Positions 37,806-60,698 of a stretch of DNA of 64,000 bases are shown piece by piece. A program made the translations under genes and the position numbers. Source of the stretch: Ranitomeya imitator (taxonomy: Eukaryota). Below the pieces are notes generated by a model that worked only from the letters and a program-made list of their open reading frames with translations, did no database searches and was not told where the DNA came from. Numbering within the stretch: position 1 is the stretch's first letter; every line of letters begins with the position of its first letter. The DNA lies in the NCBI RefSeq assembly GCF_032444005.1, contig NC_091288.1, positions 220,534,001 to 220,598,000 of the forward strand, read 5' to 3'.

Positions 37806-40800
37806 GAGAAACAAGTTCAGTTTATGAAGTTCTAAATCGACTGGATAGAAAGAAGAGTTTAATAAAAAGACCTCGCAAGTTCACCATTCATGATGTGCTG
37901 GTCATAAGACCTGTTTGCATTGAGAAACAAGCCTTTGATGAAGATATTATCTGGCATTTTCTGCAAAAGTTAATGGCCCTGAATGCCTCAGCAAGGAATA
38001 CAAACGTTCAGGAAAGCACAGAAGTCGGATCTAGAAGTATTATTGATGTTGCAGACATTAGTGTTTCAGCGTCTATACATCCTCTAGATATAGTTTGCAT
38101 TCTCCTACATTCTTCGGACATTTTTTTACAACAGGAAATTTTGTCAAAAATGTACTTGTGTCAGTACGCCGTCCCACTGCTGCTCCCGGCCGGTAATGGC
38201 CACAACTGCACTTTCATGCTGTGGGTGATGAGAGAGATCATTATAAAATGGATTTCTTGCAGTAAAGACCTCAGAGAAGATAATTTAGTGAACATAAAAA
38301 TGCCAACAATTTCCTTCGTAAGACTTGGAGAATCTGGCTTTTCGAAGTCCACAATTCTTAATAACTTGCTTTCTTCGTCGATGTCTCGCTTTGAAATGTT
38401 TTTCAGCTGTGAAATGGATGGTGGAGACCAACCTAAAACTGTATCTAATGGTCTGGTCGAAATCTCCTGGTACTTTCCCGGTAAACAGCAGAATTTATAC
38501 TCTGAACCTTTTGCAGTTACAAATTTACACGGAGACATCAGGGACCATTACAAGCAGTTCAGATTTATAGCAGAAATATCGTCCGTGGTGTTCCTGTTTA
38601 TTAAAGATGTGACCGATGCAGATTTTAACTTCTTATCTTCCTGCAAAAACACACACTTTTTTGTAATTGTGGAAGAAAGTACTAAGGTAAAATCAACAGA
38701 ATTACTTAGAAATCTGGAAATGTTATCTAAAACCATAAACCTGAAGATGTGCAAAATCAGCACTAATAGAAATAGAGAACTGGTGAAAATGGTGCGGTCA
38801 CGTGTGTCAGACATTGTTAAAACCACTGACAAAAAAATGTGCTTGGTCGACATGGCTCCCACTGCTAAATACTTAGACATTGAGGTGGACGAAAACAATG
38901 GACCTTGTCAAAAGGCGAAAGAATATGCCCAGTCAATAATTCAACATATAGAAAGTACACTTGAATATAAGAGCGGTACAATGAAACTGCAGGGCGCTCT
39001 ATGGAAGGAAATATCTAAAATAGACAAGGAGTTATGTAGACAGAAATACCAAGGGGACACAGATGACACAGATCACAAGAACCGACTAGTCAGTAGGCGC
39101 TTGGAAAACCACAGAGCTCAGTATCAGCAGGCGGTTCCTCAGGACATTCACTCATTTATTAAAGCAATGAAGGAGTTGGACATGACAGAAAACCGCTATT
39201 TTCTAAAGTGGATGAAAACTTTCCTTGATTCTCTTGCTAGAAAAAATCTATCCGCTCTACGTACAAAATTCAAACAGAAGCAGAAGGAGTCATCAGCGTT
39301 TGACAAAGGGATATTGTATTTGTCTCAAGAGATCTCTGATAGTTCGCTGGGTGTTGAACACTTTTTACGTGAGTTAGCACAATATTATGAGGCTGAATGT
39401 TCTTTGGTAAAGGTGGATGAAGTGAAAGAGAATCAGAGAAAGTTTACAGATCTCCCAGGTATTGCCGCCGATCTCCTGTTGGATGGTTTCCCATTGGAGC
39501 TGATTGATGGAGATGCCTCCAACATTCCCTTACAGTGGATAACTGATGTCCTGACTGAGCTGGATAACAAGACTGGAGGACAATGCAGGATGAGGGTGAT
39601 CACTGTGCTGGGGGTGCAGAGTACGGGGAAGTCCACCCTCCTGAACACCATGTTTGGTCTACAGTTCCCTGTGGCCAGTGGTCGATGCACACGAGGAGCC
39701 TTCATGAATCTTTTGAAAGTGGAGAAGAACTTCCAGAAAGAACTAGGATGTGAATTTATTCTGGTGATTGACACTGAAGGGTTGAAAGCTCCTGAATTGT
39801 CTAAACTCGATGACAGTTATGAACATGACAATGAGTTGGCCACACTTGTGGTTGGGTTGAGTGATGTCACCATAGTTAATATCTCCATGGAAAATACATC
39901 AGACATGAACGACACATTGACCATTGTTCTGCATGCATTTCTTAGAATGAATGGAGTCGGTAAGAAGCCCAACTGCCAATTTGTACATCAGAATGTAAGT
40001 GATGTGAGTACAGATGACAATACCATGATAGGTCGAGCACAATTTTTGAATGAACTCCAAGAAATGATCAAAGTAGCTGCAAAAATGGAAAAGAAGGATA
40101 CAAACATACAGTTTTCAGATATCCTTGACTATGACCCCCAGAAACACAGCTGGTACATCCCAGGTTTGTGGCACGGTGTTCCTCCGATGGCTTCAATTAA
40201 TGTTGGATACAGTGAAACTATTTATGAATTAAAAAAATTCATGTTCAAATTCATGACAGAAAAACATCATGCAGGTATCCATAGCATTAGATCTTTTACC
40301 AAATGGACAAATACCTTGTGGCAAGCTATAAAGTACGAATCTTTTATCTTTAGTTTCAGAAACATCCTGGCAGCCGAGGCCTACGAGCAGCTGTGTAACA
40401 AGTACTCAGAACTAGAATGGGAATTTCGGAGGCAGGCCTACAAACTGATCTCCAAATTTGAAAATTCAATCAAGAATCAATCAATCGAAAGTAATACTCA
40501 GGGACAGTTAGAGCAAACATTAAATGAATCAATGGATCAAGTCTTGGAGCAAGGGGAGAAAAATATGAACACTCAACTATCAACGTTTTTTAAAACTGGA
40601 AGCAACAATCCTCATCTTATAGAAAGATACAAAGAAGAATTTTTTAATTCTGTGAAATGTCTCAGGAGAGAGCTGCAAAATCTCATCTCAAGCAAATTTA
40701 CAGAAACTATTTCAGTTGAAAAGGGAAAACATAATCTTGAAATGATACTGAAGCAGTATCTCCAAAATATTGACAGCCAACTCAATAGTTATAAAGCAAA

Positions 40801-42490
40801 GTTATCTGGCCTGCGCGACGTCAGAGAGCTGGAGGAAGAGTTTGAGTCCATATGGCAGGGAATAATTGGAAACCTACAACCACACACCATAGAAAAACTG
40901 AATGTTGGCAGCAGAATGTTAAAGCAACTTCGAGATGAAATGAGGAACAGAGGAAGCGATGTCAGCGGGATGTTACATAATGTGGGGTCTCTTCAACAAT
41001 ATCAAGAGAAAAGCTTTTGTGTAGAAGACAAGCATACAGATATCAGTATTTTACAAAAATGTGTTAATTTACTGAAACGTAACAATGCCAAAGACCAACT
41101 TCAGAACTGTGCATCAACAATCACTGAGCTTTGCCAAGATTACGTTACAGAGAAGGTCAAGACCGGAGAGGATTACAGTGACATGTACTGCAGAGAATTA
41201 CTAAACATCATAAATGGCCACCTTGAGAAAAATTCTGGAAAACTGTCCTACAACCATTTGTTTCAGGTAGAGCTCAAGCTCCATATATTGGGTAGAGCAG
41301 CTCCTCAATTTCAGAATATGCATGACCACTATCGGGTGAGTAATGATCCTATCTATCAAATTCGAGCGCTGAAACCAAAGTATTTCAACATACTTAAAAG
41401 TAAAATCATCCATACTAATGAAACAAACGTCAGAGCAAAGAATTTTTGTGAGCAAGGATTAATTCCGGCTATAAAGGCTTATATTTACAACAATCTCGGG
41501 AGACAGATAATCGATGATATTCTCAAAGACGCAGATGGTGCAATATTTAAAAGTAGAAAATCCTTCCATTACTATCTCTTGGAAGAGATGCTTGACATAG
41601 ACTCCTTCGAGAGGTATAATATGTACATTAACAATTACAAGACCTACGTTAAGAGATGGATTTACATGTACATTCTACAAAAATATCAAAACAATGATAC
41701 CTTATCAAAGCTGATAGATAAAAACCTAAAGTCAATTCTTAAAAAAATAAGATGTGCCATCGGTGACACTCAGGCTCAGCCCTTTGACAACATGTCAGAA
41801 TTTCTCAAATATTTCTCTATGGTTTTAAAGCAAGATTTGGTGATTCCTCGGATTGAGATGGAAATGACCGCCTTCCAAAACAAAGCAAATATGTCCCAAT
41901 TCTGGCGAGACATTGAATCGTTCCTCTTTGAGATTAAAAATCAAATTAGGGCCAGTCTAAAGACTAGCAGCGTTGCATTTCTCCTTAGTAATCTTCGTCT
42001 ACAGCCTCAAACTGCATTGGCTTCTAAAGTCATTGGCTGCGACCAGGAATGTCCATTCTGCCATGTTCCATGTGAAGCAGAAAGTGTTAACCATAGGGAA
42101 CATTTTGCAACTTGCCACCGACCTAAAGGAATGGCCCAGTATACATGGTCGGAAACCAATGCTCTGTGCACTTCAATTTGCACCAACGATGTCGTTTCTG
42201 ATGACTGTTTTGCAAATCTGCACACTAATGGAGAATGGATTCCTTATAAAAACTACCAAATGGTTTATCCAGAGTGGATCATAGAGACCGAGGAGAAGAA
42301 CAATTCTTCAAATTACTGGAAATTCATCTTCACAAGCTTCAATCTTGAATTTGCTAAATTATACGATGTTGAGCCAGCTGAAATACCGGAGGAATGGTAT
42401 CGAATAACAAAGAAGCACGCTCTGCGGAACTTGAAGGATGCCTATAACATAGGAGAAAAGAGGGAGAAATACAAGTTCATTAACATTTAA
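37806..42490 (+). CDS. URGCP/GVIN1-family very large inducible GTPase (VLIG), giant terminal coding exon
   Basis: Acceptor TTTTTGTCTTAG at 37805, then an open frame of about 1560 codons to TAA. G1 GVQSTGKS (39611-39634), G2 GRCTRG, G3 DTEG (39770-39781), HDNELAT, FVHQNV, WYIPGLW, C-terminal GCDQECPFCHVPC..H..CHRP. No exact orthologue assigned. Confidence 0.93.
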
Positions 42491-42937: not shown

Positions 42938-44542
42938 CAGCTGTGTGAAAAAATGTTCACCCCCTTCCTGATTTCTTATTCTTTTGTATGTTTTTTACAC
43001 TTAAATGTTTAAGATCACCAACCAAATGTAAATATTAGAGAAGGATAACACAAGTAATCTCAAAATGCAGTTTATAAATGAAGATTTTATTATTAAGGGA
43101 AAAAGAAATCCAAACCTCCAGGGCCCTGTGTGAGAAAGTGATTTCCCGCTAAACCTAATACCTGGTTGGGCCGCCCTTAGCAGTAACTGCAATCCATCGT
43201 TTGCGATTACAACGCTCTGGAGGGATTTTGGCCGCTCATCTTTGTAAAATTGTTGTAATTCAGTCACGGAGGTTTCCAAGAATGAACCGCATTTTTAAGG
43301 TCATTACAGCATCTCAATCTGATAAAGGTCAGGACTTTGACTAGGCCACTCCAATGTCTTAATTTTGTTTTTCTTAAGCCATTCAGAGGTGGACTTGCTG
43401 GTGTGTTTTGGGTCATTGTCCTGCTACATAACCCAAGTGCACTATAGCTTGAGGTCACAAACAGATGGCCGCACATTCTCCTGCAGGATTTTCTGGTCAG
43501 AAAAAACTGCAGAATTCATGTTTCCATTTACCACAGCAAGTCTTCCAAGTCCTGAAGCAGCAAAACAGCCCCTGACCATCACACTACCACCACCATATTT
43601 TACTGTTGGTATGATGTTCCTTTTCTGAAATGCTGTGTTACCGTACTTCTAAGCCAGATGTAATTGGACATACACCTTCCAAAAAGTTAAACTTTTGTCT
43701 CGTCAGTCCACACAGTATTCTCCCAAAAGTCTTGGGGAACATCAAGATGTTTTCTGGCAAAACTGAGGCAAGCCTTTATGTTCTTATTGCTCAGCAGTGG
43801 TTTTTGTCTTGGAACTCTGCCATGCAGCCATTTTTGCCCCGTCTCTTTCTTATGGTGGAGTCATGAACACTGACCTTTGCTGAGACAAGTGACTGCTGCA
43901 GTTCTTTGGATGTTGTTGTGGAGTCTTTTGTGACCTCTTGGATGAGTTGTTGCTGCACTCTTGGAGTAATTTTGGTCGGCCGGCCACTCCTGGGAAGGTT
44001 CAACTCTGTTCCATGTTTTCGCCATTTGTGGATAATGGCTCTCACTGTGGTTCGCTGGAGTCCCAAAGCTTTAGAAATGGCTTTATAATTGTTTCCAGAC
44101 TGATAGATTTCAATGACTTTGTTTCTCAGTTGTTGCATAGTTTATTTTGATTGCGGCATGCCTAGATTTTGAGGATCTTATGGTCTACAGTATTTACTTT
44201 GTCAGGCAGGTCCTATTTAAGTGATTTCTTGATTAAGAACAGGTGTGGCAGTAATCAGACCTCTGTGTGTGGCTAGATAATGTGATCTCGGCTTCACAAA
44301 GAGGTGATAAATCACAATTAATTTATGTTTTAGGTGGGCCGCAATAAAGTTTTCACACAGAGCCCTATAGGTTTGGATTTCTTTTTCCATTATTAATAGA
44401 CATTCATTTATAAACTGCATTTTGTGTTACTTGTGTTATCTTTGTCTAGTATTTACATTTGTTTGTCCTAAACAATTAAGTGTGAGAAACATGGAAAAAT
44501 GACAGGAAATCTGGAATGGGCAAACACTTTTTCACACAACTG
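42938..44542 (-). mobile_element. Degenerate Tc1-family transposon (third family)
   Basis: TIRs CAGCTGTGTGAAAAAATGTTCACCCC / GGGCAAACACTTTTTCACACAACTG followed by TA. Minus ORF ..YKAISKALGLQRTTVRAIIHKWRKHG..LPRSGRPTKI. Confidence 0.9.
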
Positions 44543-45204
44543 TATGAAAATTGATGTAAAGGTGCATTGGAGCAGTTACTAATGTCCGCCAATCAAATGT
44601 CACTATATATTTTTGGAAGATTTAAAAATAATGAAAGTAACCTTACGGGCTGTTATCGGTGACCTCCTACTTGTCCTCTGCTCCAGCTTTTCCTTCTTCA
44701 GTTTTTTCTCTGCATTATATCTTACACACAGCTTGATGTCTTTTATAAAACTTAGATTTTTATCTTTTATAATACTTATAAATGTTTTGCGCTAATAAAC
44801 ATTGATGGTTAATATAAACTCTGAATTTATTTTGTATAAAAAAAAATAAAAAAATAAAAAATAATCGCCATAAAGTAAAGTCATGGGAAACTGAAATGTA
44901 GGCGTGATGGAATAAAGTATGTGACTTATCAAAAGATACTGTGAAGCTCCGCCACTGGACACCATTTCTTTAATCTTTATAAGTCCCACGTTCCGCAATA
45001 ATTGATGATATATTGTCAACATGAACATTTATTTTTGTAAAAAGCTTATAAGGAGTCCAAAGAATAAAAGATACAATACTCATCACACAGATCTCCCCTT
45101 CCTCGATCCTGCACCTCTTGGTGCCCCGCAGGTGTCTGCTTCCCAGGATGTTCCGACACAGAAACATGTGACCGCTGAAGCCAATCACTGGTTAAGGCAG
45201 CCAG

Positions 45205-48200
45205 TGTATCTCTATAGAGGGAGCTCCCTCTAATGGTGGCTGCAGACTGGATCTCATCATCTATCTCTGTATACAGTGAGCTCCCCCTAGTGGTGACTGC
45301 AGACAGGATCTTATCATGTATCTCTGTATACAGGGAGCTCCCCCTAGTGGTGACTGCAGACAGGATCTTATCATGTATCTCTGTATACAGGGAGCTCCCC
45401 CTAGTGGTGGCTGCAGACAGGATCTTATCATGTATCTCTGTATACAGGGAGCTCCCCCTAGTGGTGGCTGCAGACAGAATCTTATCATGTATCTCTGTAT
45501 ACAGGGAGCTCCCCCTAGTGGTGGCTGCAGACAGGATCTTGTGTATCTCTGTATACAGGGAGCTCCCCCTAGTGGTGGCTACAGACAGGATCTTATCATG
45601 CATCTCTGTATACAGGGAGCTCCCCCTAGTGGTGGCTACAGACAGGATCTTATCATGTATCTCTGTATACAGGGAGCTCCCCCTAGTGGTGGCTGCAGAC
45701 AGGATCTTATCATGTATCTCTGTATACAGGGAGCTCCCCCTAGTGGTGGCTACAGACAGGATCTTATCATGCATCTCTGTATACAGGGAGCTCCCCCTAG
45801 TGGTGGCTGCAGATAGGATCTTATCATGTATCTCTGTATACAGGGAGCTCCCCCCAGTGGTGGCTGCAGGCAGTATCTTATCATGTATCTCTGTATACAG
45901 GAAGCTCCCCCTAGTGGTGACTGCAGACAGGATCTTATCATGTATCTCTGTATACAGGGAGCTCCCCCTAGTGGTGGCTGCAGACAGGATCTTATCATGT
46001 ATCTCTGTATACAGGGAGCTCCCCCTAGTGGTGACTGCAGACAGGATCTTATCATGTATCTCTGTATACAGGGAGCTCCCCCTAGTGGTGGCTGCAGACA
46101 GAATCTTATCATGTATCTCTGTATACAGGGAGCTCCCCCTAGTGGTGACTGCAGACAGGATCTTATCATGTATCTCTGTATACAGGGAGCTCCCCCTAGT
46201 GGTGGCTGCAGACAGAATCTTATCATGTATCTCTGTATACAGGGAGCTCCCCCTAGTGGTGGCTGCAGACAGGATCTTGTGTATCTCTGTATACAGGGAG
46301 CTCCCCCTAGTGGTGGCTACAGACAGGATCTTATCATGCATCTCTGTATACAGGGAGCTCCCCCTAGTGGTGGCTGCAGATAGGATCTTATCATGTATCT
46401 CTGTATACAGGGAGCTCCCCCCAGTGGTGGCTGCAGGCAGTATCTTATCATGTATCTCTGTATACAGGAAGCTCCCCCTAGTGGTGACTGCAGACAGGAT
46501 CTTATCATGTATCTCTGTATACAGGGAGCTCCCCCTAGTGGTGGCTGCAGACAGGATCTTATCATGTATCTCTGTATACAGGGAGCTCCCCCTAGTGGTG
46601 GCTGCAGACAGGATCTTATCATGCATCTCTACATACAGGGAGCTCCCCCTAATGGAGACTGCACAGGATCTTATCATGTATCTCTGTATACAGTGAGCTC
46701 CCCCTAGTGGTGACTGCAGACAGGATCTTATCATGTATCTCTGTATACAGGGAGCTCCCCCTAGTGGTGACTGCACACAGGATCTTATCATGTATCTCTG
46801 CATACAGGGAGCTCCCCCTTTTGGTGACTGCAGACAGGCTCTTATCATGTATCTCTATATACAGGGAGCTCCCCGTAGTGGTGACTGCAGACAGGATCTT
46901 ATCATGTATCTCTATATACAGGGCGTTTCCCCTAGTGCTGACTGCAGACAGGATATTATCATGTATTTCTGTATACAGGGAGCTCCCCCTAGTGGTGGCT
47001 GCAGACAGGATCTTATCATGTATCTCTGTATACAGGGAGCTCCCCCTAGTGGTGGCTGCAGACAGGATCTTATCATGTATCTCTGTATACAGGGAGCTCC
47101 CCTTAGTGGTGGCTGCAGACAGGATCTTATCGTGTATCTCTGTATACAGGGAGCTCCCCCTAGTGGTGACTGCACACAGGATCTTATCGTGTGTCTCTGC
47201 ATACAGGGAGCTCCCCCTTTTGGTGACTGCAGACAGGATCTTATCATGTATCTCTATATACAGGGAGCTCCCCGTAGTGGTGACTGCAGACAGGATCTTA
47301 CCATGTATCTTTATATACAGGGAGTTCCCCCTAGTGGTGACTGCAGACAGGATCTTATCATGTATCTCTATATACAGGGCGTTTCCCCTAGTGCTGACTG
47401 CAGACAGGATATTATCATGTATCTCTGTATACAGGGAGCTCCCCCTAGTGGTGGCTGCAGACAGGATCTTATCATGTATCTCTGTATACAGGGAGCTCCC
47501 CCTAGTGGTGGATGCAGACAGGATCTTATCATGTATCTCTGTATACAGTGAGCTCCCCCTAGTGGTGGCTGCAGACAGGATCTTATCATGTATCTCTATA
47601 TACAGGGAGCTCCCCCTAGTGGTGGCTGCAGACAGGATCTTATCATGTATCTATGCATACAGGGAGCTCCCCCCAGTGGTGGCTGCAGACAGGATCTTAT
47701 CATGTATCTCTATATACAGGGAGCTCCCCCTAGTGGTGGCTGCAGACAGGATCTTATCATGTATCTCTATATACAGGGAGCTCCCCCTAGTGGTGGCTGC
47801 AGACAGGATCTTATCATGTATCTCTGTATACAGGGAGCTCCCCCCAGTGGTGGCTGCAGACAGGATCTTATCATGTATCTCTGTATACAGGGAGCTCCCC
47901 CTAGTGGTGACTGCAGACATGATCTTATCATATATCTGTATACAGGGAGCTCCCACTAGTGGTGACTGCAGACAGGATCTTATCATCTATCTCTGTATAC
48001 AGGGAGCTCCACCTAGTGGTGACTGCAGACAGGATCTTATCATCTATCTCTGTATACAGGGAGCTCCCCCTAGTGGTGACTGCAGATAGGATCTTATCAT
48101 GTATCTCTGTATACAGGGAGCTCCCCCTAGTGGTGGCTGCAGACTGGATCTTATGTATCTCTGTTTACAGGGAGCTCCCCCTAGTGGTGGCTACAGACTG

Positions 48201-51200
48201 GATCTTATGTATCTCTGTTTACAGGGAGCTCCCCCTAGTGCTGATTGCAGACAGAATCTTATCATGTATCTCTGTATACAGGAAGCTCCCCCTAGTGGAG
48301 GCTGCAGACAGGATCTTATCATGTATCTCTGTATACAGGGAGCTCCCCCTAGTGGTGGCTGCAGACAGGATCTTATCATGTATCTCTGTATACAGTGAGC
48401 TCCCCCTAGTGGTGACTGCAGACAGGATCTTATCATGTATCTCTATATACAGGGCGTTTCCCCTAGTGCTGACTGCAGACAGGATATTATCATGTATCTC
48501 TGTATACAGGGAGCTCCCCCTAGTGGTGGCTGCAGACAGGATCTTATCATGTATCTCTGTATACAGGGAGCTCCCCTTAGTGGTGGCTGCAGACAGGATC
48601 TTATCACGTATCTCTGTATACAGGGAGCTCCCCCTAGTGGTGACTGCACACAGGATCTTATCATGTATCTCTGTATACAGGGAGCTCCCCCTAGTGGTGG
48701 CTGCAGACAGGATCTTATCATGTATCTCTGTATACAGGGAGCTCCCCCTTTTGGTGACTGCAGACAGGATCTTATCATGTATCTCTATATACAGGGCGTT
48801 TCCCCTAGTGCTGACTGCAGACAGGATATTATCATGTATCTCTGTATACAGGGAGCTCCCCCTAGTGGTGGCTGCAGACAGGATCTTATCATGTATCTCT
48901 GTATACAGGGAGCTCCCCCTAGTGGTGGCTGCAGACAGGATCTTATCATCTATCTCTGTATACAGGGAGCTCCACCTAGTGGTGACTGCAGACAGGATCT
49001 TATCATGTATCTCTGTATACAGGGAGCTCCCCATAGTGGTGGCTGCAGACAGGATCTTATCATGTATCTCTGTATACAGGGAGCTCCCCCCAGTGGTGGC
49101 TGCAGACAGTATCTTATCATGTATCTCTGTATACAGGAAGCTCCCCCTAGTGGTGACTGCAGACAGGATCTTATCATCTATCTCTGTATACAGGGAGCTC
49201 CCCCTAGTGGTGACTGCAGACAGGATCTTATCATGTATCTCTGTATACAGGGAGCTCCCCCTAGTGGTGACTGCAGACAGGATCTTATCATGTATCTCTG
49301 TATACAGGGAGCTCCCCCTAGTGGTGGATGCAGACAGGATCTTATCATGTATCTCTGTATACAGGGAGCTCCCCCTAGTGGTGACTGCAGACAGGATCTT
49401 ATCATGTATCTCTGTATACAGGGAGCTCCCCCTAGTGGTGGATGCAGACAGGATCTTATCATGTATCTCTGTATACAGGGAGCTCCCCCTAGTGGTGACT
49501 GCAGACAGGATCTTATCATGTATCTCTGTATACAGGGAGCTCCCCCTAGTGGTGGCTGCAGACTGGATCTTATGTATCTCTGTTTACAGGGAGCTCCCCC
49601 TAGTGGTGGCTACAGACAGAATCTTTTCTTGTATCTCTGTATACAGGGAGCTCCCCCCAGTGGTGACTGCAGACATGATCTTATCATGTATCTCTGTATA
49701 CAGGGAGCTCCCTTAGTGGTGGCTACAGACAGGATCTTATCATGTATCTCTGCATACAGGGAGCTCCCCCTAGTGGTGGCTGCAGATAGGATCTTATCAT
49801 GTATCTCTGTATACAGGGAGCTCCCCCCAGTGGTGGCTGCAGGCAGTATCTTATCATGTATCTCTGTATACAGGAAGCTCCCCCTAGTGGTGACTGCAGA
49901 CAGGATCTTATCATGTATCTCTGTATACAGGGAGCTCCCCCTAGTGGTGACTGCAGACAGGATCTTATCATGTATCTCTGTATACAGGGAGCTCCCCCTA
50001 GTGCTGACTGCAGACAGGATATTATCATTTATCTCTGTATACAGGGAGCTCCCCCTAGTGGTGGCTGCAGACAGGATCTTATCATGTATCTCTGTATACA
50101 GGGAGCTCCCCCTAGTGGTGGCTGCAGACAGGATCTTATCATGTATCTCTGTATACAGGGAGCTCCCCTTAGTGGTGGCTGCAGACAGGATCTTATCGTG
50201 TATCTCTGTATACAGGGAGCTCCCCCTAGTGGTGACTGCACACAGGATCTTATCATGTATCTCTGCATACAGGGAGCTCCCCCTTTTGGTGACTGCAGAC
50301 AGGATCTTATCATGTATCTCTATATACAGGGAGCTCCCCGTAGTGGTGACTGCAGACAGGATCTTATCATGTATCTCTATATACAGGGCGTTTCCCCTAG
50401 TGCTGACTGCAGACAGGATATTATCATGTATCTCTGTATACAGGGAGCTCCCCCTAGTGGTGGCTGCAGACAGGATCTTATCATGTATCTCTGTATACAG
50501 GGAGCTCCCCCTAGTGGTGGCTGCAGACAGGATCTTATCATGTATCTCTGTATACGGGGAGCTCCCCCTAGTGGTGACTGCAGACAGGATCTTATCATGT
50601 ATCTCTATATACAGGGAGCTCCCCCTAGTGGTGGCTGCAGACAGGATCTTATCATGTATCTCTATATACAGGGAGCTCCCCCTAGTGGTGGCTGCAGACA
50701 GGATCTCATCATGTATCTCTGTATACAGGGAGCTCCCCCCAGTGGTGGCTGCAGACAGGATCTTATCATGTATCTCTGTATACAGGGAGCTCCCCCTAGT
50801 GGTGACTGCAGACATGATCTTATCATATATCTGTATGCAGGAAGCTCCCCCTAGTGGTGACTGCAGACAGGATCTCATCATCTATCTCTGTATACAGGGA
50901 GCTCCACCTAGTGGTGACTGCAGACAGGATCTTATCATGTATCTCTGTATACAGGGAGCTCCCCCTAGTGGTGACTGCAGATAGGATCTTATCATGTATC
51001 TCTGTATACAGTGAGCTCCCCCTAGTGGTGGCTGCAGACAGGATCTTATCATGTATCTCTGTATACAGGGAGCTCCCCCTAGTGGTGGATGCAGACAGGA
51101 TCTTATCATGTATCTCTGTATACAGGGAGCTCCCCCTAGTGGTGGCTGCAGACTGGATCTTATGTATCTCTGTTTACAGGGAGCTCCCCCTAGTGCTGAC

Positions 51201-52876
51201 TGCAGACAGAATCTTATCATGTATCTCTGTATACAGGAAGCTCCCCCTAGTGGAGGCTGCAGACAGGATCTTATCATGTATCTCTGTATACAGTGAGCTC
51301 CCCCTAGTGGTGACTGCAGACAGGATCTTATCATGTATCTCTATATACAGGGCGTTTCTCCTAGTGCTGACTGCAGACAGGATATTATCATGTATCTCTG
51401 TATACAGGGAGCTCCCCCTAGTGGTGGCTGCAGACAGGATCTTATCATGTATCTCTGTATACAGGGAGCTCCCCTTAGTGGTGGCTGCAGACAGGATCTT
51501 ATCATGTATCTCTGTATACAGGGAGCTCCCCCTAGTGGTGACTGCACACAGGATCTTATCATGTATCTCTGCATACAGGGAGCTCCCCCTTTTGGTGACT
51601 GCAGACAGGCTCTTATCATGTATCTCTATATACAGGGAGCTCCCCCTAATGGTGACTGCAGACAGGATCTTATCATGTATCTCTATATACAGGGCGTTTC
51701 CCCTAGTGCTGACTGCAGACAGGATATTATCATGTATCTCTGTATACAGGGAGCTCCCCCTAGTGGTGGCTGCAGACAGGATCTTATCATGTATCTCTGT
51801 ATACAGGGAGCTCCCCCCAGTGGTGGCTGCAGACAGTATCTTATCATGTATCTCTGTATACAGGAAGCTCCCCCTAGTGGTGACTGCAGACAGGGTCTTA
51901 TCATCTATCTCTGTATACAGGGAGCTCCACCTAGTGGTGGCTGCAGACAGGATCTTATCATGTATCTCTGTATACAGGGAGCTCCCCCCAGTGGTGGCTG
52001 CAGACTGGATCTTATGTATCTCTGTTTACAGGGAGCTCCCCCTAGTGGTGGCTACAGACTGGATCTTATGTATCTCTGTTTACAGGGAGCTCCCCCTAGT
52101 GGTGGCTACAGACTGGATCTTATGTATCTCTGTATACGGGGAGCTCCGCCTAGTGGTGGCTACAGACAGAATCTTTTCTTGTATCTCTGTATACAGGGAG
52201 CTCCCCCCAGTGGTGACTGCAGACATGATCTTATCATGTATCTCTGTATACAGGGAGCTCCCTTAGTGGTGGCTACAGACAGGATCTTATCATGTATCTC
52301 TGTATACAGGGAGCTCCCCCTAGTGGTGGCTGCAGACAGGATCTTATCATGTATCTCTGTACACAGGGAGCTCCCCCTAGTGGTTGCTGCAGATAGGATC
52401 TTATCATGTATCTCTGTATACAGGGAGCTCCCCCTAGTGGTGACTGCAGACAGGATCTTATCATGTATCTCTGTATACAGGGAGCTCCCCCTAGTGGTGA
52501 CTGCAGACAGGATCTTATCATGTATCTCTGTATACAGGGAGCTCCCCCTAGTGGTGACTGCAGACAGGATCTTATCATGTATCTCTGTATACAGGGAGAT
52601 CCCCCTAGTGGTGACTGCAGACAGGATCTTATCATGTATCTCTGTATACAGGGAGCTCCCCCTAGTGGTGACTGCAGACAGGATCTTATCATGTATCTCT
52701 GTATACAGGGAGCGCCCCCTAGTGGTGACTGCAGACAGGATCTTATCATGTATCTCTGTATACAGGGAGCTCCCCCTAGTGGTGACTGCAGACAGGATCT
52801 TATCATGTATCTCTGTATACAGGGAGCTCCCCCTAGTGGTGGCTGCAGACTGGTTCTTATGTATCTCTGTTTACAG
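45205..52876. repeat. 57-bp satellite array, about 135 units, with higher-order structure
   Basis: Unit ATGTATCTCTGTATACAGGGAGCTCCCCCTAGTGGTGGCTGCAGACAGGATCTTATC with recurring diagnostic variants and occasional 54-bp units. Confidence 0.98.
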
Positions 52877-53146
52877 GTAGCTGGTGTGTGTAGTTTTATT
52901 ACATCTCGGTAGCTTCTTTGTTCCTGTGGAATGAAGATGCATGAGAGATATTTCCCACACTCAGTATCTGCTCTCATTCTGATAGTTATCTGGAGACACC
53001 AGGGATCTGCTGATTCAGCAGGAGACGCTTGCACTTGCAGAACATAACTGTCCTCTGGTCTGCATGTCTTGGCAAGCCGCCCTTCACCAGTGTTAAATTG
53101 TCTCATCATGTCGGAATACATCTGATGTATGATGTCTGTGCAAAAG

Positions 53147-56100
53147 GGTCAGTTGCACTGCAAATAGCAACCCCCCAGCAGAAAGCAGTAAAAAAATGCA
53201 AATAAAAATGTAATTAAGAATGGAAGTGGTGCAAGTGGTGTGAATAGTGTCTGTGATAATGGTGACGGGTCAGGGGCGGTTTCTGCTGGAGGTATGGATG
53301 GTGTGAATGGTGCCAGTGCGGGGACTTCTACTAGTGAAAATGGTGAGGCTGAGGTAAGTGAGGTGGAGATGGTTGACTGTGAGGTTGAGGGTTCAGGGAA
53401 TATAGGGGCTGGTCCATCGTCCCCCTCACCTGCAGCCGCCATTAGTTATGCGGCTGCTGCTGCTGGGGTTCCACAGGGGGCTCTCCGGACCCAGAGAATG
53501 AAGCTTTTTGCCGCCGTTTCCTGGAGGCCCTCAAAAAAGGGGAGCGGACGATCAATGTAGAGGGGAGAGAGGTGGTGTTGTCCTACTGGCTAGAAAATTT
53601 TGGTCTAGCTCCCTTCCAAGAGAAAAGGGAGGGGTAGACCGTGTGGTTCCTCCCGACAGCCGGGCAGGGGGTCTCCAGGAGAAATGTGGTTCGTCTTCGC
53701 TGGAGGGGCGATGAAGCGTGTCCATCCAGGACAAATGTGGTGAAGCTGCTCATGAAGATGGACTTCAGGGCTATTGGCATCCTTGCTCTGATACATCCTT
53801 TTGGGACCTCCACCTTTTGATATCAGCTTTGTTTGGCCGGAGGGCTTGGAGCTTTTTTGGTCGAATTATGAGCTGGTATAAGAGGAGCCGGGCTGGCGAG
53901 GGTTCATCATGGACTAAATTCTCGCCAAAGTGGGCCGAAGAAAGTGACCGTTTTAACATGTAATGAGTCTCTTTCTGGCGTTGACATAATGACCTGGTTG
54001 AGTCGGTAATGCGAGGTTGTGGAGGTCCCTAAGAAGAACTGGGAAGATTTTGGCATCTGGCAAGGAGGCTGGACCTTCATGGTAAAGTTGAAGCTTTCAG
54101 GTGGCACTGTCACCCACATCCCTTCCTCGGCTTTCCTGGGAAGGGATCGGATTCTGGTCTTCTACCAGCGGCAGCCGAAGGTATGCCACAGGTGCGATGA
54201 TCCTCGCCACTACAGTGCGGGCTGCAAGGTGCAGAAATGTGCCTTGTGTGGCGAGGTAGGTCACTTCGCCACATCCTGTGGTGTCATTTTGTGTCACCTC
54301 TGTGGTGATCTAGGTCACCTGTTCAGCCGCTGCCCTCGTTCCTTCTCTAATGCCATGGCCAGCCAGGCGAAGGGGAGCCGTGAGGAAGTTCCTGGCGGTG
54401 CAACTTCTGCAGAGGTTGGAGGTGGCAGTGGGGGAGGAGCTGAGGGGCTGATGAGGAATGGCAGGGCTAGGGGCCCCTCTTACCAGCAGAGGCAGGCAAG
54501 GCGGCAGGGGGCAGAAGGAGTCTTGGGAAACTGGGGTAATGGCTGCCCCCTCCTCCGAAGCGACGGCCCATGTCACTTGGGCCCCGGGGGAGGAAGCAGT
54601 GAATGAGATCAGATGGATGGAGAATGAGGAAGTGGCTGATCTCTGATGCCTTCCAATATGAAAGTTTTGATGAGGGTGGAGGGGAACAGCCAAAAGAAAT
54701 GGGTGACAAGGGTACCAAGAGTGCCAAGAGTGCCAAAAGTAAAAAAAAGAAGAAAAAAGGTGGAAATCTTCTTCCCTGACCAAGGTGCCTAAGGAAGGTC
54801 CCACCGATTCCCCTCTGATCCCTCTCTCCAACCAGTTCCAAGCCCTTGACGACCTTGCTGTGACGGGAGTCGGGGGTGAGGTTCCGGAGGTAACATCGGG
54901 AGGGCCTTTGGGAAGTGGGGGAGTCCCTTCTCCAGGGGGTGTGTTTTCCTCGGGAGGTGGGGACAACCCTGGGTCCGGAGATGAGAAAGAGGTGGGAGGG
55001 ATGGATACCTCTGTCTCTCTGAAAAGAAGAGGGGGGGCTTCATCGTCCGGTGATGAGCGGGCTAAGAAAAAGGCCATCTAACTCGATCACTCATAATGGC
55101 GGCACCCACCCCGTTGACTCTAGCGACATTAATGGTTAAAGTCTGATGCGGCTAGATTTGCGGCCTTTGATTTTCTCACCCGATTTGAGGCTTAAATTTT
55201 GTTTTTGCAGGAGACCAGGTTTACGGATATGGGGGCCATACGCAAGGCGGAGAGCGAGTGGAGGTGCGGGTCTTCGTACTGGTCTCTTGCGGTCGAACCG
55301 TGTAGCGGGGTGGCAGTCCTTTTTAAGACTGCATCGGTTGAATTCCGGAGAGTTATCGAGGTAGAAATGGGGAGGTGCCTGGTCTTAGACATCTTCATGA
55401 GGGGACAGGAGCTTCGGCTCATTAACATCTATGGTCCGCAGTCAAAGTGGGACTGTAAATGTCTCTTCCTGAAGATTAAGCCCTATCTTTTTACGAGTCA
55501 GCAGGTGGTCTTTGGAGGTGACTTTAATACTGTCACAAGGCTTCGTGATAAGGGAGGCTCCATTGACCGGCTGGCTTATGATAGTAATACTCTTAATAGC
55601 ATGGAGGAGCACCGTGAGGAGATCTCCAGAGTGAAGTCTTTACTCAAGAGGTGTCAGCACGATAGGCACACATCTTTGGTTTTTGAGAGGGATTTCGGGA
55701 GGTACCGCTCGCCTAACCCCTACAGAAACTGTAAGATGTCAGTGACTTGTAAGGTGGTGACAGGTTTGGTCGACGATACGGGTTCCCTGAACAGATCCAA
55801 ATCAGGGATCCTGGAGGTGATCAGATCTTTCTACTCACACCTCTTGGGGAAGAGGGATCTGGATCGGAACGTGATGTCAGCTTTCCTGGCCGAGGCCATC
55901 CCTGAGCCAGGGGATGACCCCTCGCTTCACGTTTTGACAGAACCAATCAGGGAAGAGGAAATGCGACTTGCCATTGATGGGCTTTGGCCTAAGAAATCGC
56001 CAGGTCCGGATGGCTTAACATCTGAGTTTTATAAGACCTTTAGGGACTCCTTGTCCCCCTCTTGACTGAGGTGTTTAACGATTGTCTCTCCTTGGGTGCT

Positions 56101-57585
56101 CTTTCCCGGTCAATGAGGCAGTCGGCCCTGATTATCCTGTCAAAGGGTAAGGACCCGTCCCGTATTGAGAATTGGCGTCCCATAGCGCTTCTCAATACGG
56201 ACTGGAAGGTTCTGGCAAAGGTGCTGTTCAAACGGCTGGTGAAGTTTGCACCCCGGCTCCTTTCGGGGGTCCAGCACTGCTCTGTTCCAGGCTGCAGTAC
56301 ATTTAGTGCTGTGCTCGGTGTCCGAGAGGCAGTGAAGCAGGGCAGGGTGGGTCACTGGAAGGGGTACTTGCTGTCTTTAGACCAGGCGAAGGCTTTTGAT
56401 CGGGTTAACCACGATTACCTCTGGTCCATCCTTCTGAGGTACGGTCTGCCTGGGGGGTTTGTAAATTGGCTAAAGATCTTGTTTCCGCGGGGGCAGAGAC
56501 TTTCCCGCTCGTGAATGGTTGGTCTGGCCACCCTTTTGAGGTTGGGTCTGTTGTCCGCCAGGGCTGTCCATTGAGCCCGCTGGTATACGTGTTTGCGATA
56601 GATCCCCGTGAGGGGTGTTGCGACACGCTGGAAAGCATGGAGCACTTCCTCCTTCAGTGTCCTTTTAATACAGGGGTCTACAACAGGGTGGGTGCTTCCA
56701 TAGGCTGGCCTCGGCTGGCACACCTTTCCTATGCGGAGTGGGCGTATGGGGCATTCGGATCCCTGGGTGGCCGAGATCGGGGCACTTTATTTCTAGTCAG
56801 TTTAGTCATCAGGTTTTACACGTGGAACGCACGGTGCTTAGTGTCAACTCAGCAGAAAATCCTCCCCCGGGACGAGGTTGTTCGGAACATTCTGGGTGGC
56901 CTGGTGAAGGTGCGCTCTCTGGAGTATGACAGGCTAGGTGCAGCGAGGGCCTCTCTTCTCTGGAGAGGGTTCTCATTTAGTGTACCTAGGGCTTAGATAA
57001 GCAGGTAAATGGTAGGGACAGGTAGATAGCTTCAGTAGGGACAGGTAGATAGTTAGGGACAGGACAGGGACAGCCCAGGGACAGTTAGGTAGGCACGCGG
57101 TGAGTTAGGTAGGGTAGTAGGGTCAGGCAGGGAGAGACAGGGAAAGGTAGTTAGAAAAAATAGGGGCAGATATCTAGACAGGTAGGGACGGCTGGTAGAG
57201 TAAGGATTGCTAGGGTAGAAGCCTGTCATCTCCGGTTTCCCGGTGGCGGGCTGGGGCTTTTCACGATCAGATTTTTGTTTTGCAGAAGTGAATTACTGAT
57301 ATAGGGCTTACAGGCACCAATCCTGGCTCTGGGTAAGTGTTGTAATATAGAGAGTTATGTAGCATTATATTGTAATGTGAGGTGATGATCCTGTGGCTTA
57401 CAGGGTTAATGCACCTGTCTTGTAAGCAAGAGGTTATGAGTTCCTCGGTGAGCTTATTTTTCTATTGTGTTTTTTTTTTTGGGTGGGATGGAGGGGTTTG
57501 GTGCTAGGTTGTTTGTAGTTGTATTTGCTGTGTAACAAAAATGAAATAAAAAATAAAAAAATAAATTAAAAAAATAAAAAACTTT
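53147..57585 (+). mobile_element. Tx1-clade L1 non-LTR retrotransposon, internally deleted
   Basis: ORF1 has three CCHC knuckles (CHRCDDPRHYSAGC, CALCGEVGHFATSC, CHLCGDLGHLFSRC). ORF2 has APE motifs (FLQET, NIYGP, GGDFN), RT motifs (SLDQAKAFDRV, QGCPLSP) and C-terminal ESMEHFLLQC. A-rich tail at about 57540-57585. Confidence 0.9.
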
Positions 57586-57789
57586 TTTTTTGTGTGTGTT
57601 TTAGATAGATGTGCTTAAGCCAGGTGGCTATAGTGTTTCTTTTTGGGCGATGGAGCAGAGTTTTCTTTGTCAGGTTTGGTATGAAGTGTGTATGTGCGCG
57701 TGTATTAATAAAATGTTTCTTCTCTCCTTGGGTGAGGTAACCTGGGGAGGAGGAGATCTGGATGAATTCAAATGTGAAAAGACAAAGGA

Positions 57790-58356
57790 CAGAAAACAAC
57801 ATAAGAAAGAAAGATGGAGGAAGCTTCTCCATTATTAATCTGGCTTAATGTCACCTTACAATAGCAAGGTGACATTAACCCTTCATTACCCCATATCCCA
57901 CCGCTACACTGGAATGGGAAGAGAGTGGCCAAGTGCCAGAATAGGCGCATCCTCCAGATGTGCCTGTTCTGGGGTGGCTGGGGGCAGATGTTTTTAGCCA
58001 GGGGGGGGGCCAATAACCGTGGACCCTCTCCAGGCTATTAATATCTGCCCTCAGTCACTGGCTTTACCACTCTGGCGGAGAAAATTGCGCAGGAGCCCAC
58101 GCCAATGTTTTCCACCATTTAACCCCTTAATTTACTAACTAGAACGGCCAAATTTTGCACATACACACTACTAACATTAGTAGTGTGGAATATGCAAAAA
58201 AAAAATGGAGATATGAGATGGTTTACTGTATGTAATCATGTCTCATATCATGTCGGGTTTAGGAATGAGAAAGCAAAAGCCGGTAATTGAATTACCGGCT
58301 TTAAGGCTATATCGCGCTCGATGAAATATTAATATATATACATATGTGTCTCACTG

Positions 58357-58391
<35 letters not shown>

Positions 58392-58655
58392 TATATATAC
58401 ATATACATATATATATAATATATGTTTTTACGATTTTTTGAGAACATGGATCCATTGTATGTCGGTTTTGAAAGCCTGCGAGAAAATCTCGCAGTACAGA
58501 TGCCATACGGATTACATACGGAGGATGCCATGCGCAAAATACGCTGACACACCCTGCCTATGGATGACATACGGACCACTATTTTGGGGACTTTTCTGCA
58601 TATTACGGCCGTAAAAAATGGACCGTATTTTTATACGCTGAGTGTGAGGCCGGCC
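57790..58655. mobile_element. Right part of a large Harbinger-like non-autonomous element containing an (AT)n tract
   Basis: Ends GTGTGAGGCCGGCC followed by TTA. Interior resembles 29080-29380. (AT)n at about 58355-58422. Confidence 0.5.
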
Positions 58656-58659
58656 TTAT

Positions 58660-59065
58660 ACAGCTACCACTAGAGGAGTGCTCTACATACAGATTTATAC
58701 AGTCACCACTAGGGGGAGCTCACTACATACAGATTTATACAGCAACCACTAGGGGGAGCTCACTACATACAGATTTATACAGCCACCACTAGGGGGAGCT
58801 CACTACATACAGATTTATACAGCCACCACTAGGGGGAGCTCACTACATACAGATTTATACAGCAACCACTAGGGGGAGCTCACTACATACAGATTTATAC
58901 AGTCACCACTAGGGGGAGCTCACTACATATATATGCAGCCACCACTAGAGGGAGCTCACTACATACAGATTTATACAGCAACCACTAGGGGGAGCTCACT
59001 ACATACAGATTTATACAGCAACCACTAGGGGGAGCTCACTACATATATATGCAGCCACCACTGCA
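58660..59065. repeat. 40-bp tandem array, about 10 units, sharing its core with the 57-bp satellite in the opposite orientation
   Basis: Unit CAGCCACCACTAGGGGGAGCTCACTACATACAGATTTATA. Confidence 0.93.
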
Positions 59066-60289
59066 GAAGTCACTTTATTTATGTTTTTGTCCTCACAGAA
59101 TGATGTTTGTTTTTTTAGGAAAGTCCCTTTTTCCTTTGCTCATCCATACACTCATATACTTGTATTCTGGGCTGTTTCTCCGGGCATTATTGCATCTTTC
59201 TCTTGTTTCTGCCTCCTGATCTCAGCACATTAGACCTGGTCTCCTCCCTCCTGACATGTTCAGACACAGGAGACGCTATCACCACAGGCCGCGTTCATTT
59301 CTATAAGCGGTAAGAATGATAAGCGCTATGTTACTGATGACGATGATGATGATATGCGGCTCGGAGGAGGCAGATCCTTGTGAGTTGTACACGGACGGTC
59401 AGAGAATCCAGTTGATCCTCACATTGTGAAGGAATATCCCCTGCCCCCAAGAAACCAGCTCTGGGGGTCCCTCATCCTGCAGGATTCCTTCTGAGGTACG
59501 TTATAATATCCTTATTGGAGGGGGGATATGTGGAGGGAGATTAGCAGCAGCGGTGATTGATCTGCAGGCATGGAGTCACTCCATACGCAGGCTTACCAGT
59601 AGGGTCATAGGATGCATGGTTTTACGAGACCCTCCATCTCAGAGCTTCTAATTACATTTTCACTTCACACCTGTATTTTCTTTTACTAAAACTTGTTACT
59701 TTGCGGTAATAAATTTGGCGCATTTACCAATATACTAACGGCATCTATTTTCTTAATAGTTTTCAAAATTGTTTGCAAAAAGTATAAGAAAGTAAATAAT
59801 AAATTGTTCAGTTTTCTAAGACACTTTTGTAAATCAATTCCAGGAATTTATAACTTTAGAACCGATCACAAACTTTTTGTTTCCATGTGATGGACATTTG
59901 TGCTTCCTCTGCTGCTCTCTAGTGGTCACTGTGAAGAATGCACCACTTTATGCCGATCACTTTATCTGGTTATTTGCTAATATTCTCCTTACACTCTGGT
60001 CTAACAGTATTTGGTCAGTATTTTATATCAGTATTTGTAGCCAAAACCAGGAGATGTGATAACACAGAAGTGGCGACGTGTTTCTATTATACTTTTTCTC
60101 TGATTGTTTGTCTCCTGATTTTGGCACATAAATACTGATGCAAATACTGACCATTACTGGTAGTGTGAAGGCAGCCTTAGAAATGAAGAGGACTGGATCT
60201 CTAGCGCCACCCATTGGATGTAGCAATCCTAAAAGTGAATATTAACCCTTTAAAAAACCTTAGGATGAGAAGCCAAATTAGACACTCTA

Positions 60290-60334
60290 TTTGAAGACAC
60301 GTGTTTCGGGTTGTTCGCCCCTCATCGGTGCAAA
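60290..60334 (-). ncRNA. Type I hammerhead ribozyme motif
   Basis: Minus strand UUUGCA-CCGAUGA-GGGG-CGAACAA-CCC-GAAAC-ACGU-GUC-UUCAAA. Palindromic stem III ACACGUGU. Flanks AGCCAAAUCAGAC / GUCUAAUUUGGCU extend stem I. Confidence 0.75.
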
Positions 60335-60698
60335 GTGGAGGTCTGATTTGGCTAGATGGTTATAAAAACTTCAGAGCACAACAGAATGCGTTTAGAACAT
60401 GAGATCCACATGACCAGAACTGCAGCAGAAGCTGGAGCAATTAGGTTCCGAAAAACAGGTGGTGGTCCTGCCGCCACGCTATCTGATATGACACTGTGCT
60501 ACATCCTGTGGCTGCTGCTCAACGAAAGGTGTTTTTGCTTCTGTTTGCTGCAGTTTAGTTGATGTCAAACAGATACAATAATCAAAAATCACGTTATATA
60601 TAAATAGGCCGCGAGCACGGTAAATGTATGTTAGAAAAAGTGGAGTCCTCCAACAATATGATAAACACCAAGAGAAAAGGAGTAACTAGAGAAACACT

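What the first reader, a model, noticed from the sequence alone, without database searches (positions are those of the whole stretch)
45205..59065. Two divergently oriented arrays of CTCF-like motifs: a possible repeat-built insulator beside an immune GTPase gene
Seen: most 57-bp units carry GCCACCACTAGGGGGAGCTC on the minus strand (some units have point variants), and the otherwise different 40-bp array at 58660-59065 carries the same core on the plus strand. A further CTCF-like site, CCAATGGGTGGCGCTA, lies on the minus strand at 60202-60217. Established: the vertebrate CTCF core is close to CCACYAGGKGGCRC; the unit differs mainly by a C-to-A change, and divergent CTCF sites typify domain boundaries. 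Inference: on the order of 100 leftward and about 10 rightward sites could form a strong, copy-number-variable boundary 3' of the VLIG gene. Two repeats of different period keeping the same core suggests the core is what is retained.
Basis: partly seen in the sequence, partly recalled or inferred. Interest (0 to 1): 0.7.

Follow-up and report, generated by a model that had tools for sequence, protein, structure and literature searches.

The report
Frog satellite blocks carrying CTCF-like motifs
Two back-to-back repeat blocks next to a frog immune GTPase gene do carry about 130 strong matches to the binding motif of the genome-folding protein CTCF, but they belong to one repeat family that is very abundant across several related genomes, so they are probably ordinary satellite DNA, and binding is untested.

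Summary
A 57-bp array (45205-52882, about 135 units) carries the core on the minus strand, and a 40-bp array (58656-59062, about 10 units) carries it on the plus strand. With a CTCF matrix recalled from memory, the commonest unit scores 20.6 of 28.3 bits (p about 7e-8). At p<=1e-5 there are 122 leftward and 9 rightward sites.

- The two units are not "otherwise different": they align over 34-36 nt at about 90%, so the 40-bp unit is a shortened variant of the 57-bp one.
- Contigs of four runs from four coded organisms pile onto both unit types in very large numbers. This is a genome-wide satellite family, not a locus-built element. The scan found a 57-bp satellite of this kind before on other DNA of this genome.
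- Within the 57-bp array the core is no better conserved than the rest of the unit, and its variants damage the motif as much as unobserved ones would.
- The 5.8 kb between the arrays is a decayed LINE plus other high-copy repeats.

The units are almost free of CpG. CTCF occupancy and insulation remain untested and possible. Interest is modest.

The parts
45205..52882 (-). 57-bp satellite array of about 135 units. Each unit has a CTCF-type core on the minus strand (122 sites at p<=1e-5). It is nearly CpG-free (18 CpG in 7.7 kb, observed/expected 0.04). The terminal units are degenerate or truncated.
58656..59065 (+). 40-bp (occasionally 36-bp) array of about 10 units. It is a shortened variant of the same satellite unit in the opposite orientation, with 9 CTCF-type sites on the plus strand and no CpG.
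53170..57580 (+). Decayed non-LTR retrotransposon (LINE) between the arrays. It has ORF1-like pieces (ZCCHC3-type RNA-binding domain and CCHC knuckles, 54019-54606), an AP-endonuclease piece (55199-56065), a reverse-transcriptase piece (56062-56514) and an A-rich tail at about 57537-57581. Its frames are broken. It is multi-copy in all four runs.
57770..58655 (.). Other repeats directly left of the 40-bp array. A very high-copy element lies at about 57770-58170. An AT microsatellite lies at 58357-58423. The stretch 58430-58655 is a further part of a run (58169-58568) that is high-copy in runs X1 and X3 and less deep in X7 and X9, most markedly at 58169-58368.
52883..53169 (.). Low-copy flank right of the 57-bp array. 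One 420-nt contig of run X1 (depth 16.7, 2 differences) bridges the array and flank at 52825-53244, so the junction is real in at least one independent data set or in the source sample.
37895..42490 (+). Large coding exon of a VLIG/URGCP-type GTPase gene. Its stop codon lies 2.7 kb left of the 57-bp array.
60202..60220 (-). It is one of four non-array hits between 59.9 and 62.5 kb.

Best explanation
The two arrays are blocks of one satellite DNA family. The main form has a 57-bp unit. The 40-bp unit is the same unit with about 17 bp removed. The family's founding unit happens to contain a strong, CpG-free match to the vertebrate CTCF motif, so every copy carries one.

Shown: the family is present in very large numbers in several related genomes, which earlier notes of this scan call poison frogs. 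Inferred: the blocks sit here through ordinary satellite dynamics, meaning unequal exchange or slippage for growth, an inversion or independent seeding for the opposite orientation, and a later LINE insertion and other repeats between them. They were not built or kept as an insulator for the neighbouring VLIG gene.

Because the motif is strong and cannot be silenced by CpG methylation within the unit, some CTCF binding is possible. If it occurs, it would act as a by-product barrier: leftward sites anchoring loops on the VLIG side and rightward sites anchoring loops on the other side.
For: - Tandem structure and counts.
- The units are homologous beyond the core: 34-36 nt at 88-91%. A 22-nt stretch is identical, 14 of the remaining 18 nt of the short unit align, and there is a 12-17-nt gap.
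- Genome-wide abundance. In four runs of four coded organisms, the 200-nt bin holding the last two 57-bp units collects summed contig depth of 0.8-3.3 million, against 17-380 in the next bin. Between 13,000 and 53,000 contigs were laid per run.
- Those contigs show tandem joints of 44-59 nt in three runs and of 38-80 nt for the short unit in all four, so many length variants exist elsewhere.
- If the 16.7-deep bridging contig of X1 is single copy, this suggests on the order of 1e5 units per genome. The tool warns that summed contig depth is not a copy number.
- No sign of selection on the motif within the array.
- The interior is a decayed LINE plus high-copy repeats, and the window is transposon-dense.
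- Frog genomes are known to be rich in transposon-derived minisatellites that expand by unequal crossing-over (PMC10794172).
- In human alpha-satellite higher-order repeats, enriched CTCF motifs gave no binding signal in DiMeLo-seq, so a motif in a satellite need not mean binding (bioRxiv 10.64898/2026.07.18.739380).
Against: - The motif is much stronger than a chance resemblance (p about 7e-8 per unit).
- Between the 57- and 40-bp consensus units the 22-nt core stretch is perfectly identical, while the rest differs (22/22 against 14/18 plus an indel). That is what retention of the core would look like, although it is a single comparison.
- The units lack CpG, which removes the usual methylation block.
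- The orientation is exactly the boundary-type divergent one.
- Nothing here measures chromatin, so non-binding is not shown either.
Confidence: 0.7

Rival explanations
1. The arrays are occupied by CTCF and act as a strong, copy-number-variable, divergent domain boundary 3' of the VLIG gene. This is the first reader's reading, either as a selected function or as a consequential by-product.
For: - 122 leftward and 9 rightward sites at p<=1e-5, with a relative score of 0.93.
- The A at matrix position 15 is the second commonest base in the recalled matrix (about 11%) and costs only about 3 bits.
- No CpG in the units.
- The orientation is divergent.
- Xenopus TAD borders use convergent CTCF motifs and need CTCF and Rad21 (PMC8270788).
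- Tandem CTCF sites insulate in mammals (PMC7087399, listed).
- The core is identical between the two unit variants.
Against: - The family is genome-wide, at roughly 1e5 units, so nothing is specific to this locus. Binding to all copies would far exceed normal numbers of CTCF sites.
- There is no extra conservation of the core within the array, and the variants seen are as damaging as unseen ones.
- The gap between the arrays is recent junk: a LINE and other repeats.
- Satellites are commonly heterochromatic, and motif-rich human alpha-satellite repeats showed no binding.
- Sites 40 bp apart could hardly all be occupied at once (my inference from CTCF's footprint size).
Confidence: 0.2
2. The conserved stretch is kept for, or bound by, something other than CTCF. 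In the 57-bp unit the core overlaps a perfect 10-nt palindrome, GGGAGCTCCC. That palindrome could be a site for a dimeric factor (it fits the loose NF-kB-type pattern GGGRNYYYCC, recalled from memory), or a cruciform or recombination-prone element that favours array growth.
For: - The palindrome is visible in the unit consensus.
- Its positions (unit positions 32-41 on the core strand) are among the less variable.
- An earlier scan note (s1-288135, unverified) traces another CTCF-like minisatellite of this genome to a dispersed hairpin repeat.
Against: - The 40-bp variant keeps only the inner 6-nt palindrome GAGCTC, yet it keeps the whole CTCF-type core.
- No factor or structure was tested.
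- The NF-kB resemblance is recalled from memory and fails the stricter W at position 6.
Confidence: 0.05
3. Assembly artefact: the length, orientation or placement of one or both arrays is a mis-assembly of satellite reads.
For: Satellites of this abundance are hard to assemble. No laid record spans the whole stretch, and only one short contig supports one junction.
Against: - A 420-nt contig of X1 bridges the array/flank junction with 2 differences.
- The array shows mosaic unit variation (64 distinct units among 134) rather than a collapsed or duplicated consensus.
- There are no N runs near it.
Confidence: 0.03

Closest known systems
[quoted passage not shown]
   Same: These are satellite monomers that carry CTCF motifs at high density. 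Gamma satellite has been proposed as a CTCF-dependent barrier to heterochromatin spreading. The alpha-satellite repeats show that such motifs can be present without detectable binding (bioRxiv 10.64898/2026.07.18.739380).
   Different: The units here are far shorter (57 and 40 bp against about 215 and 171 bp). There is one strong site per unit (about 17 sites per kb). The units are CpG-free rather than GC-rich and methylation-sensitive. They lie interstitially beside a gene, in a frog. Binding is untested.
DXZ4 / Dxz4 and FIRRE CTCF-binding macrosatellites
   Same: These are tandem arrays in which every unit carries a CTCF site in one orientation. They act as architectural anchors (PMC3491370, listed).
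   Different: Those are single-locus arrays with kb-sized units and allele-specific binding. Here the unit is 57 bp and the family is dispersed genome-wide at about 1e5 units.
Transposon-derived subtelomeric minisatellites of frogs (for example the 52-bp SINE/tRNA-V-derived array of Xenopus)
   Same: Short-unit arrays are abundant in frog genomes. They are thought to expand by unequal crossing-over and differ between frog lineages (PMC10794172).
   Different: No transposon progenitor of the 57-bp unit was identified here. The CTCF-type core is not a described feature of those arrays.
Retrotransposon-borne CTCF sites (for example rodent SINE B2)
   Same: A repeat family spreads many copies of a CTCF motif through a genome (established knowledge; cites the model).
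   Different: The spread here is by tandem amplification of a satellite, not by dispersed retrotransposition. Occupancy is unknown.

Membership tests
Vertebrate CTCF binding site | Match to the core position weight matrix above the usual thresholds (p<=1e-5 or relative score >=0.85) | tested here: met
   20.6 of 28.3 bits, p 6.9e-8, relative score 0.93 for the commonest unit. 122 + 9 sites pass p<=1e-5. The matrix was recalled from memory and only its consensus was checked against a paper.
Vertebrate CTCF binding site | Occupancy by CTCF in vivo or binding in vitro | not testable with these tools
   No ChIP, CUT&RUN or DiMeLo data were available. All the runs laid were DNA contigs.
Vertebrate CTCF binding site | Core evolves more slowly than its flanks | tested here: inconclusive
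   Not met within the 57-bp array: minor-base frequency 0.037 against 0.044 (p 0.87), rho with information content -0.01, and observed variant types as damaging as unobserved ones. Weakly in favour between the 57- and 40-bp consensus units: 22/22 identical against 14/18, but that is one comparison only.
Vertebrate CTCF binding site | Upstream module for zinc fingers 9-11 at the canonical spacing | not tested
   I had no reliable matrix for the extended motif.
CTCF/cohesin domain boundary (insulator) | Divergent motif orientation across the boundary | tested here: met
   All sites of the left array are on the minus strand and all sites of the right array on the plus strand.
CTCF/cohesin domain boundary (insulator) | Insulation in Hi-C and cohesin stalling | not testable with these tools
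   No contact or RAD21 data were available.
CTCF/cohesin domain boundary (insulator) | Element specific to, or conserved at, the locus it insulates | tested here: not met
   Both unit types are very abundant elsewhere in four runs of four coded organisms. The spacer between the arrays is a decayed LINE and other high-copy repeats.
Satellite DNA family | Head-to-tail tandem arrays of a short unit | tested here: met
   135 and 10 units, with a wrap-around alignment of 136 units.
Satellite DNA family | High copy number at many places in the genome | tested here: met
   Summed contig depth of 0.8-3.3 million on the two terminal units against 17-380 beside them. Tens of thousands of distinct contigs were laid, with many tandem joints of varied period. 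Depth from contigs is only a rough guide.
Satellite DNA family | Shared by related species (satellite library) | tested here: met
   Runs labelled organisms A, B, C and D all hold both unit types. The organism names are coded, so how they are related is not known to me.
DXZ4/FIRRE-type macrosatellite | kb-sized unit at a single locus | tested here: not met
   The unit is 57 or 40 bp and the family is dispersed.

The most novel reading that the evidence does not exclude
The 57-bp family, with its 40-bp and other length variants, is a genuine genome-wide CTCF-binding satellite. Because it lacks CpG it cannot be switched off by DNA methylation. Its 19-22-nt core is kept by selection across unit variants and species. 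Blocks such as this pair act as very strong, orientation-specific loop-extrusion barriers in a giant frog genome.

A further speculative step is that breakage at CTCF-bound anchors itself drives the tandem growth. That would explain why so many unrelated minisatellites of this genome carry CTCF-type motifs.
Probability: 0.15. Interest if true: 0.7.

Novelty: new member of a known kind. Interest (0 to 1): 0.33.

Why it matters
If CTCF binds, this family would add on the order of 1e5 methylation-proof sites to the genome. That is enough to act as a sink for CTCF or as a large set of hard barriers. It would be a natural test of how site number, spacing (57 against 40 bp) and orientation set boundary strength, and of how giant amphibian genomes are folded.

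If CTCF does not bind, the arrays are a useful caution that a near-perfect motif repeated 130 times does not make an insulator. For this locus, the practical point is that the arrays should be annotated as satellite DNA. They should not be read as a regulatory feature of the VLIG gene without chromatin data.

Tried and rejected
1. Fetching more family members through the open reading frames that the array creates. A word-based protein search with the 272-aa array ORF (46733-47551) scored 8000 candidates and none passed.
2. A scan of metagenome contigs for the 18-nt core gave two single matches in unrelated contigs, as expected by chance, and no frog DNA.
3. A search of the scan's notes by sequence was blank for both arrays.
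4. A transposon with terminal inverted repeats enclosing both arrays is rejected. BLAST of the outer and inner flanks against the window found no matching arms beyond the array units themselves.
5. A higher-order repeat or recent block duplication inside the 57-bp array is not found. There is no clear minimum of unit distance at any offset, and the longest runs of identical consecutive units are 3-4 units. A self-BLAST printed nothing and was not repeated.
6. Solo copies of the unit elsewhere in the window: nhmmer with the unit profile gave only marginal hits (best E 0.05 at 61793-61818).
7. Rfam and tRNA scans of 42-64 kb found nothing.
8. A literature search for the core string found no paper.
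9. Chance as the explanation of the motif is rejected.
10. I did not verify the species. "Poison frog" comes from earlier notes of this scan.
Full report
**1. What is there**

Tandem Repeats Finder reports a 57-bp array at 45205-52882 (135.4 copies, 93% matches, no indels) and a 40-bp array at 58656-59045/59062 (9.9 copies, 91% matches).

The 19-nt core CCACCACTAGGGGGAGCTC, allowing three mismatches, occurs 135 times against 0.01 expected. 126 copies are on the minus strand, all inside the 57-bp array. 9 are on the plus strand, all inside the 40-bp array. None lies elsewhere in the 64 kb.

**2. Is it CTCF-like?**

Its consensus is the string that bioRxiv 10.1101/2022.08.11.503410 calls the canonical CTCF motif. 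The individual counts remain unverified.

- The commonest unit scores 20.6 of a possible 28.3 bits (p 6.9e-8 by exact score distribution, relative score 0.93).
- 122 sites of the 57-bp array and 9 of the 40-bp array pass p<=1e-5.
- The one departure at an informative position, A for C at matrix position 15, costs about 3.3 bits.
- One natural unit (52710-52728) has the C and scores 24.1 bits.

In Xenopus tropicalis, TAD borders show convergent CTCF motifs found with the standard vertebrate matrix, and TADs need CTCF and Rad21 (PMC8270788). The motif model is thus appropriate for a frog.

The left array points left and the right array points right. This is the divergent arrangement expected at a boundary.

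**3. The two arrays are one family**

It is not.

- The repeat finder pairs the last 57-bp units with the 40-bp units over 34-36 nt at 88-91% complementarity.
- A global alignment of the two consensus units over all rotations gives a 22-nt identical stretch (CAGCCACCACTAGGGGGAGCTC), 14 further identities among the other 18 nt of the short unit, and a 12-17-nt gap.
- The similarity of the non-core parts alone is marginal (275 of 5000 shuffles reach it).

The honest summary is that the 40-bp unit is a shortened relative of the 57-bp unit, with the core as the best-kept part. This is a single comparison. It favours retention of the core only weakly (22/22 against 14/18).

**4. Within-array test of core conservation**

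A wrap-around alignment cut the 57-bp array into 136 units, 134 of them complete and interior.

- Mean minor-base frequency is 0.037 in the 14-nt core and 0.044 in the rest (Mann-Whitney p 0.87). It is 0.059 against 0.034 if the 19 matrix positions are used, because position 1 is a C/T polymorphism of 72 against 62.
- Variability does not fall with the information content of the matrix position (Spearman rho -0.01, p 0.96).
- The 22 variant types seen in the core lower the score as much as the 35 types not seen (-3.6 against -3.7 bits, p 0.93). Substitutions at the most informative G (position 10) occur in 8 units.

The units are young and co-amplified, so this test has limited power.

There is no clear higher-order period. 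Runs of identical consecutive units reach only 3-4 units. The outermost units are degenerate or truncated.

**5. The family is genome-wide and shared**

An index search with 49300-59299 found 20 holding runs from 9 studies, labelled as four coded organisms. None holds more than 44% of the words. I laid the contigs of one run per organism on 52769-58768. That is 6000 letters, covering two 57-bp units, the whole interior and 2.8 of the 40-bp units.

- In all four runs the first 200-nt bin collects summed contig depth of 0.8-3.3 million, against 17-380 in the next bin.
- 13,452-53,090 contigs were laid per run.
- The contigs show many "goes back" joints of 44-59 nt within the 57-bp units in runs X1, X3 and X7, with one of 54 nt also in X9, and of 38, 62 and 80 nt within the 40-bp units across all four runs. 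Both unit types therefore exist as tandem arrays of varied period elsewhere.
- In X1, a 420-nt contig of depth 16.7 with two differences bridges the array/flank junction (52825-53244). If that is single-copy depth, the figures suggest on the order of 1e5 units (very roughly 3-6 x 1e5) per genome.

The tool states that summed contig depth is not a copy number, so I use only the order of magnitude. I could not compare the sequences directly, so identity of the two families is likely but not proven. The scan has therefore found this kind of thing before on other DNA.

**6. What lies between and around the arrays**

- The 5.8 kb between the arrays holds a decayed LINE on the plus strand. It has a ZCCHC3-type RNA-binding domain and CCHC knuckles (54019-54606), an AP-endonuclease piece (55199-56065), a reverse-transcriptase piece (56062-56514) and an A-rich tail near 57537-57581. 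It is multi-copy in all four runs.
- Next comes a very high-copy element at about 57770-58170, then an AT microsatellite, then a further repeat abutting the 40-bp array.
- No inverted repeats link the outer or inner flanks, so the pair is not the two ends of one transposon.
- To the left, the 1531-codon ORF at 37895-42490 is a VLIG/URGCP-type GTPase (PF25683 E 1.6e-191, PF25496 E 1e-91).
- The rest of the window holds further LINE reverse transcriptases.

**7. Other properties**

- The arrays are almost CpG-free: 18 CpG in 7.7 kb (observed/expected 0.04) and none in the 40-bp array, against 0.42 for the window. Methylation could not block binding at the motif.
- In the 57-bp unit the core overlaps a perfect 10-nt palindrome, GGGAGCTCCC. 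The 40-bp unit keeps only GAGCTC.
- Sites spaced 57 bp apart might just be co-occupied. Sites 40 bp apart probably could not all be. This is my inference from CTCF's known footprint and was not tested.

**8. Reading**

Shown: these are two inverted blocks of one abundant, shared satellite family. Each unit is a strong in-silico CTCF site, and a LINE and other repeats have landed between the blocks.

Inferred: the blocks are here through satellite dynamics, not because a boundary was selected beside the VLIG gene.

Open: whether CTCF binds. Precedents point both ways. Human gamma satellite is proposed to act as a CTCF barrier, while motif-rich alpha-satellite higher-order repeats gave no DiMeLo-seq signal (bioRxiv 10.64898/2026.07.18.739380). 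Frog genomes are known to teem with transposon-derived minisatellites that grow by unequal crossing-over (PMC10794172).

My odds are about 0.7 for satellite DNA without a locus-specific role, 0.2 for a bound and consequential boundary, and small odds for another factor or an assembly artefact.

**9. Limits**

- The CTCF matrix was recalled from memory.
- The species name rests on unverified scan notes.
- Contig depth is only a rough guide to abundance.
- Only one read-laying run was allowed, so the left edge of the 57-bp array, the bulk of the 40-bp array and possible transcripts were not examined.
- No literature match to the core string exists in the held library.

Noticed in passing
window 59910-62524: Four non-array CTCF-type hits cluster just right of the 40-bp array: 59910 (-) 17.2 bits, 60202 (-) 13.8, 61746 (+) 16.5 and 62506 (-) 17.2. 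Outside the arrays the window has 6 hits at p<=1e-5 against 1.6 +/- 1.2 in shuffles. Two of them contain CCACTAG, as the satellite core does.
   Followed up: partly
window 60921-61691, with 60699-60738 and 60883-60922: A separate 77-bp tandem array (9.8 copies, 89% matches). It is immediately preceded by a 40-nt inverted repeat at 97.5% identity with a spacer of about 144 nt. The unit is unrelated to the 57-bp satellite.
   Followed up: no
window 57770-58570: A very high-copy dispersed element at about 57770-58170, with summed contig depth of 0.15-1.7 million in all four runs. The adjoining stretch 58169-58568 is very deep in runs X1 and X3 and less deep in X7 and X9, most markedly at 58169-58368. 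This suggests a lineage-restricted repeat. There is no Rfam or tRNA match.
   Followed up: partly
window 61746-61764 (+) and 61793-61818 (-): A weak, inverted pair of unit-like sequences (nhmmer E 1.1 and 0.05) just right of the 77-bp array. It may be a relic of a dispersed hairpin-type progenitor of the satellite unit.
   Followed up: no
window 45205-52882, unit positions 32-41 on the core strand: GGGAGCTCCC, a perfect 10-nt palindrome with a SacI site at its centre, overlaps the 3' half of the CTCF-type core in every 57-bp unit. It fits the loose NF-kB-type pattern GGGRNYYYCC (recalled from memory).
   Followed up: no
window 18255-20141 and 25212-26858: Two further reverse-transcriptase ORFs (RVT_1, E 2.9e-29 and 1.8e-34) on the plus strand. 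They lie inside the span that another first-stage note models as introns and exons of the VLIG gene.
   Followed up: no
window 42937-43137 and 44350-44543: A 200-nt inverted repeat (82% identity) between the VLIG stop codon and the 57-bp array, probably two copies of a small transposon.
   Followed up: no
runs X15-X20: Six small runs guessed to be RNA hold 11-20% of the sampled words of 49300-59299. I could not tell whether this reflects transcription of the satellite, the LINE or the other repeats.
   Followed up: no
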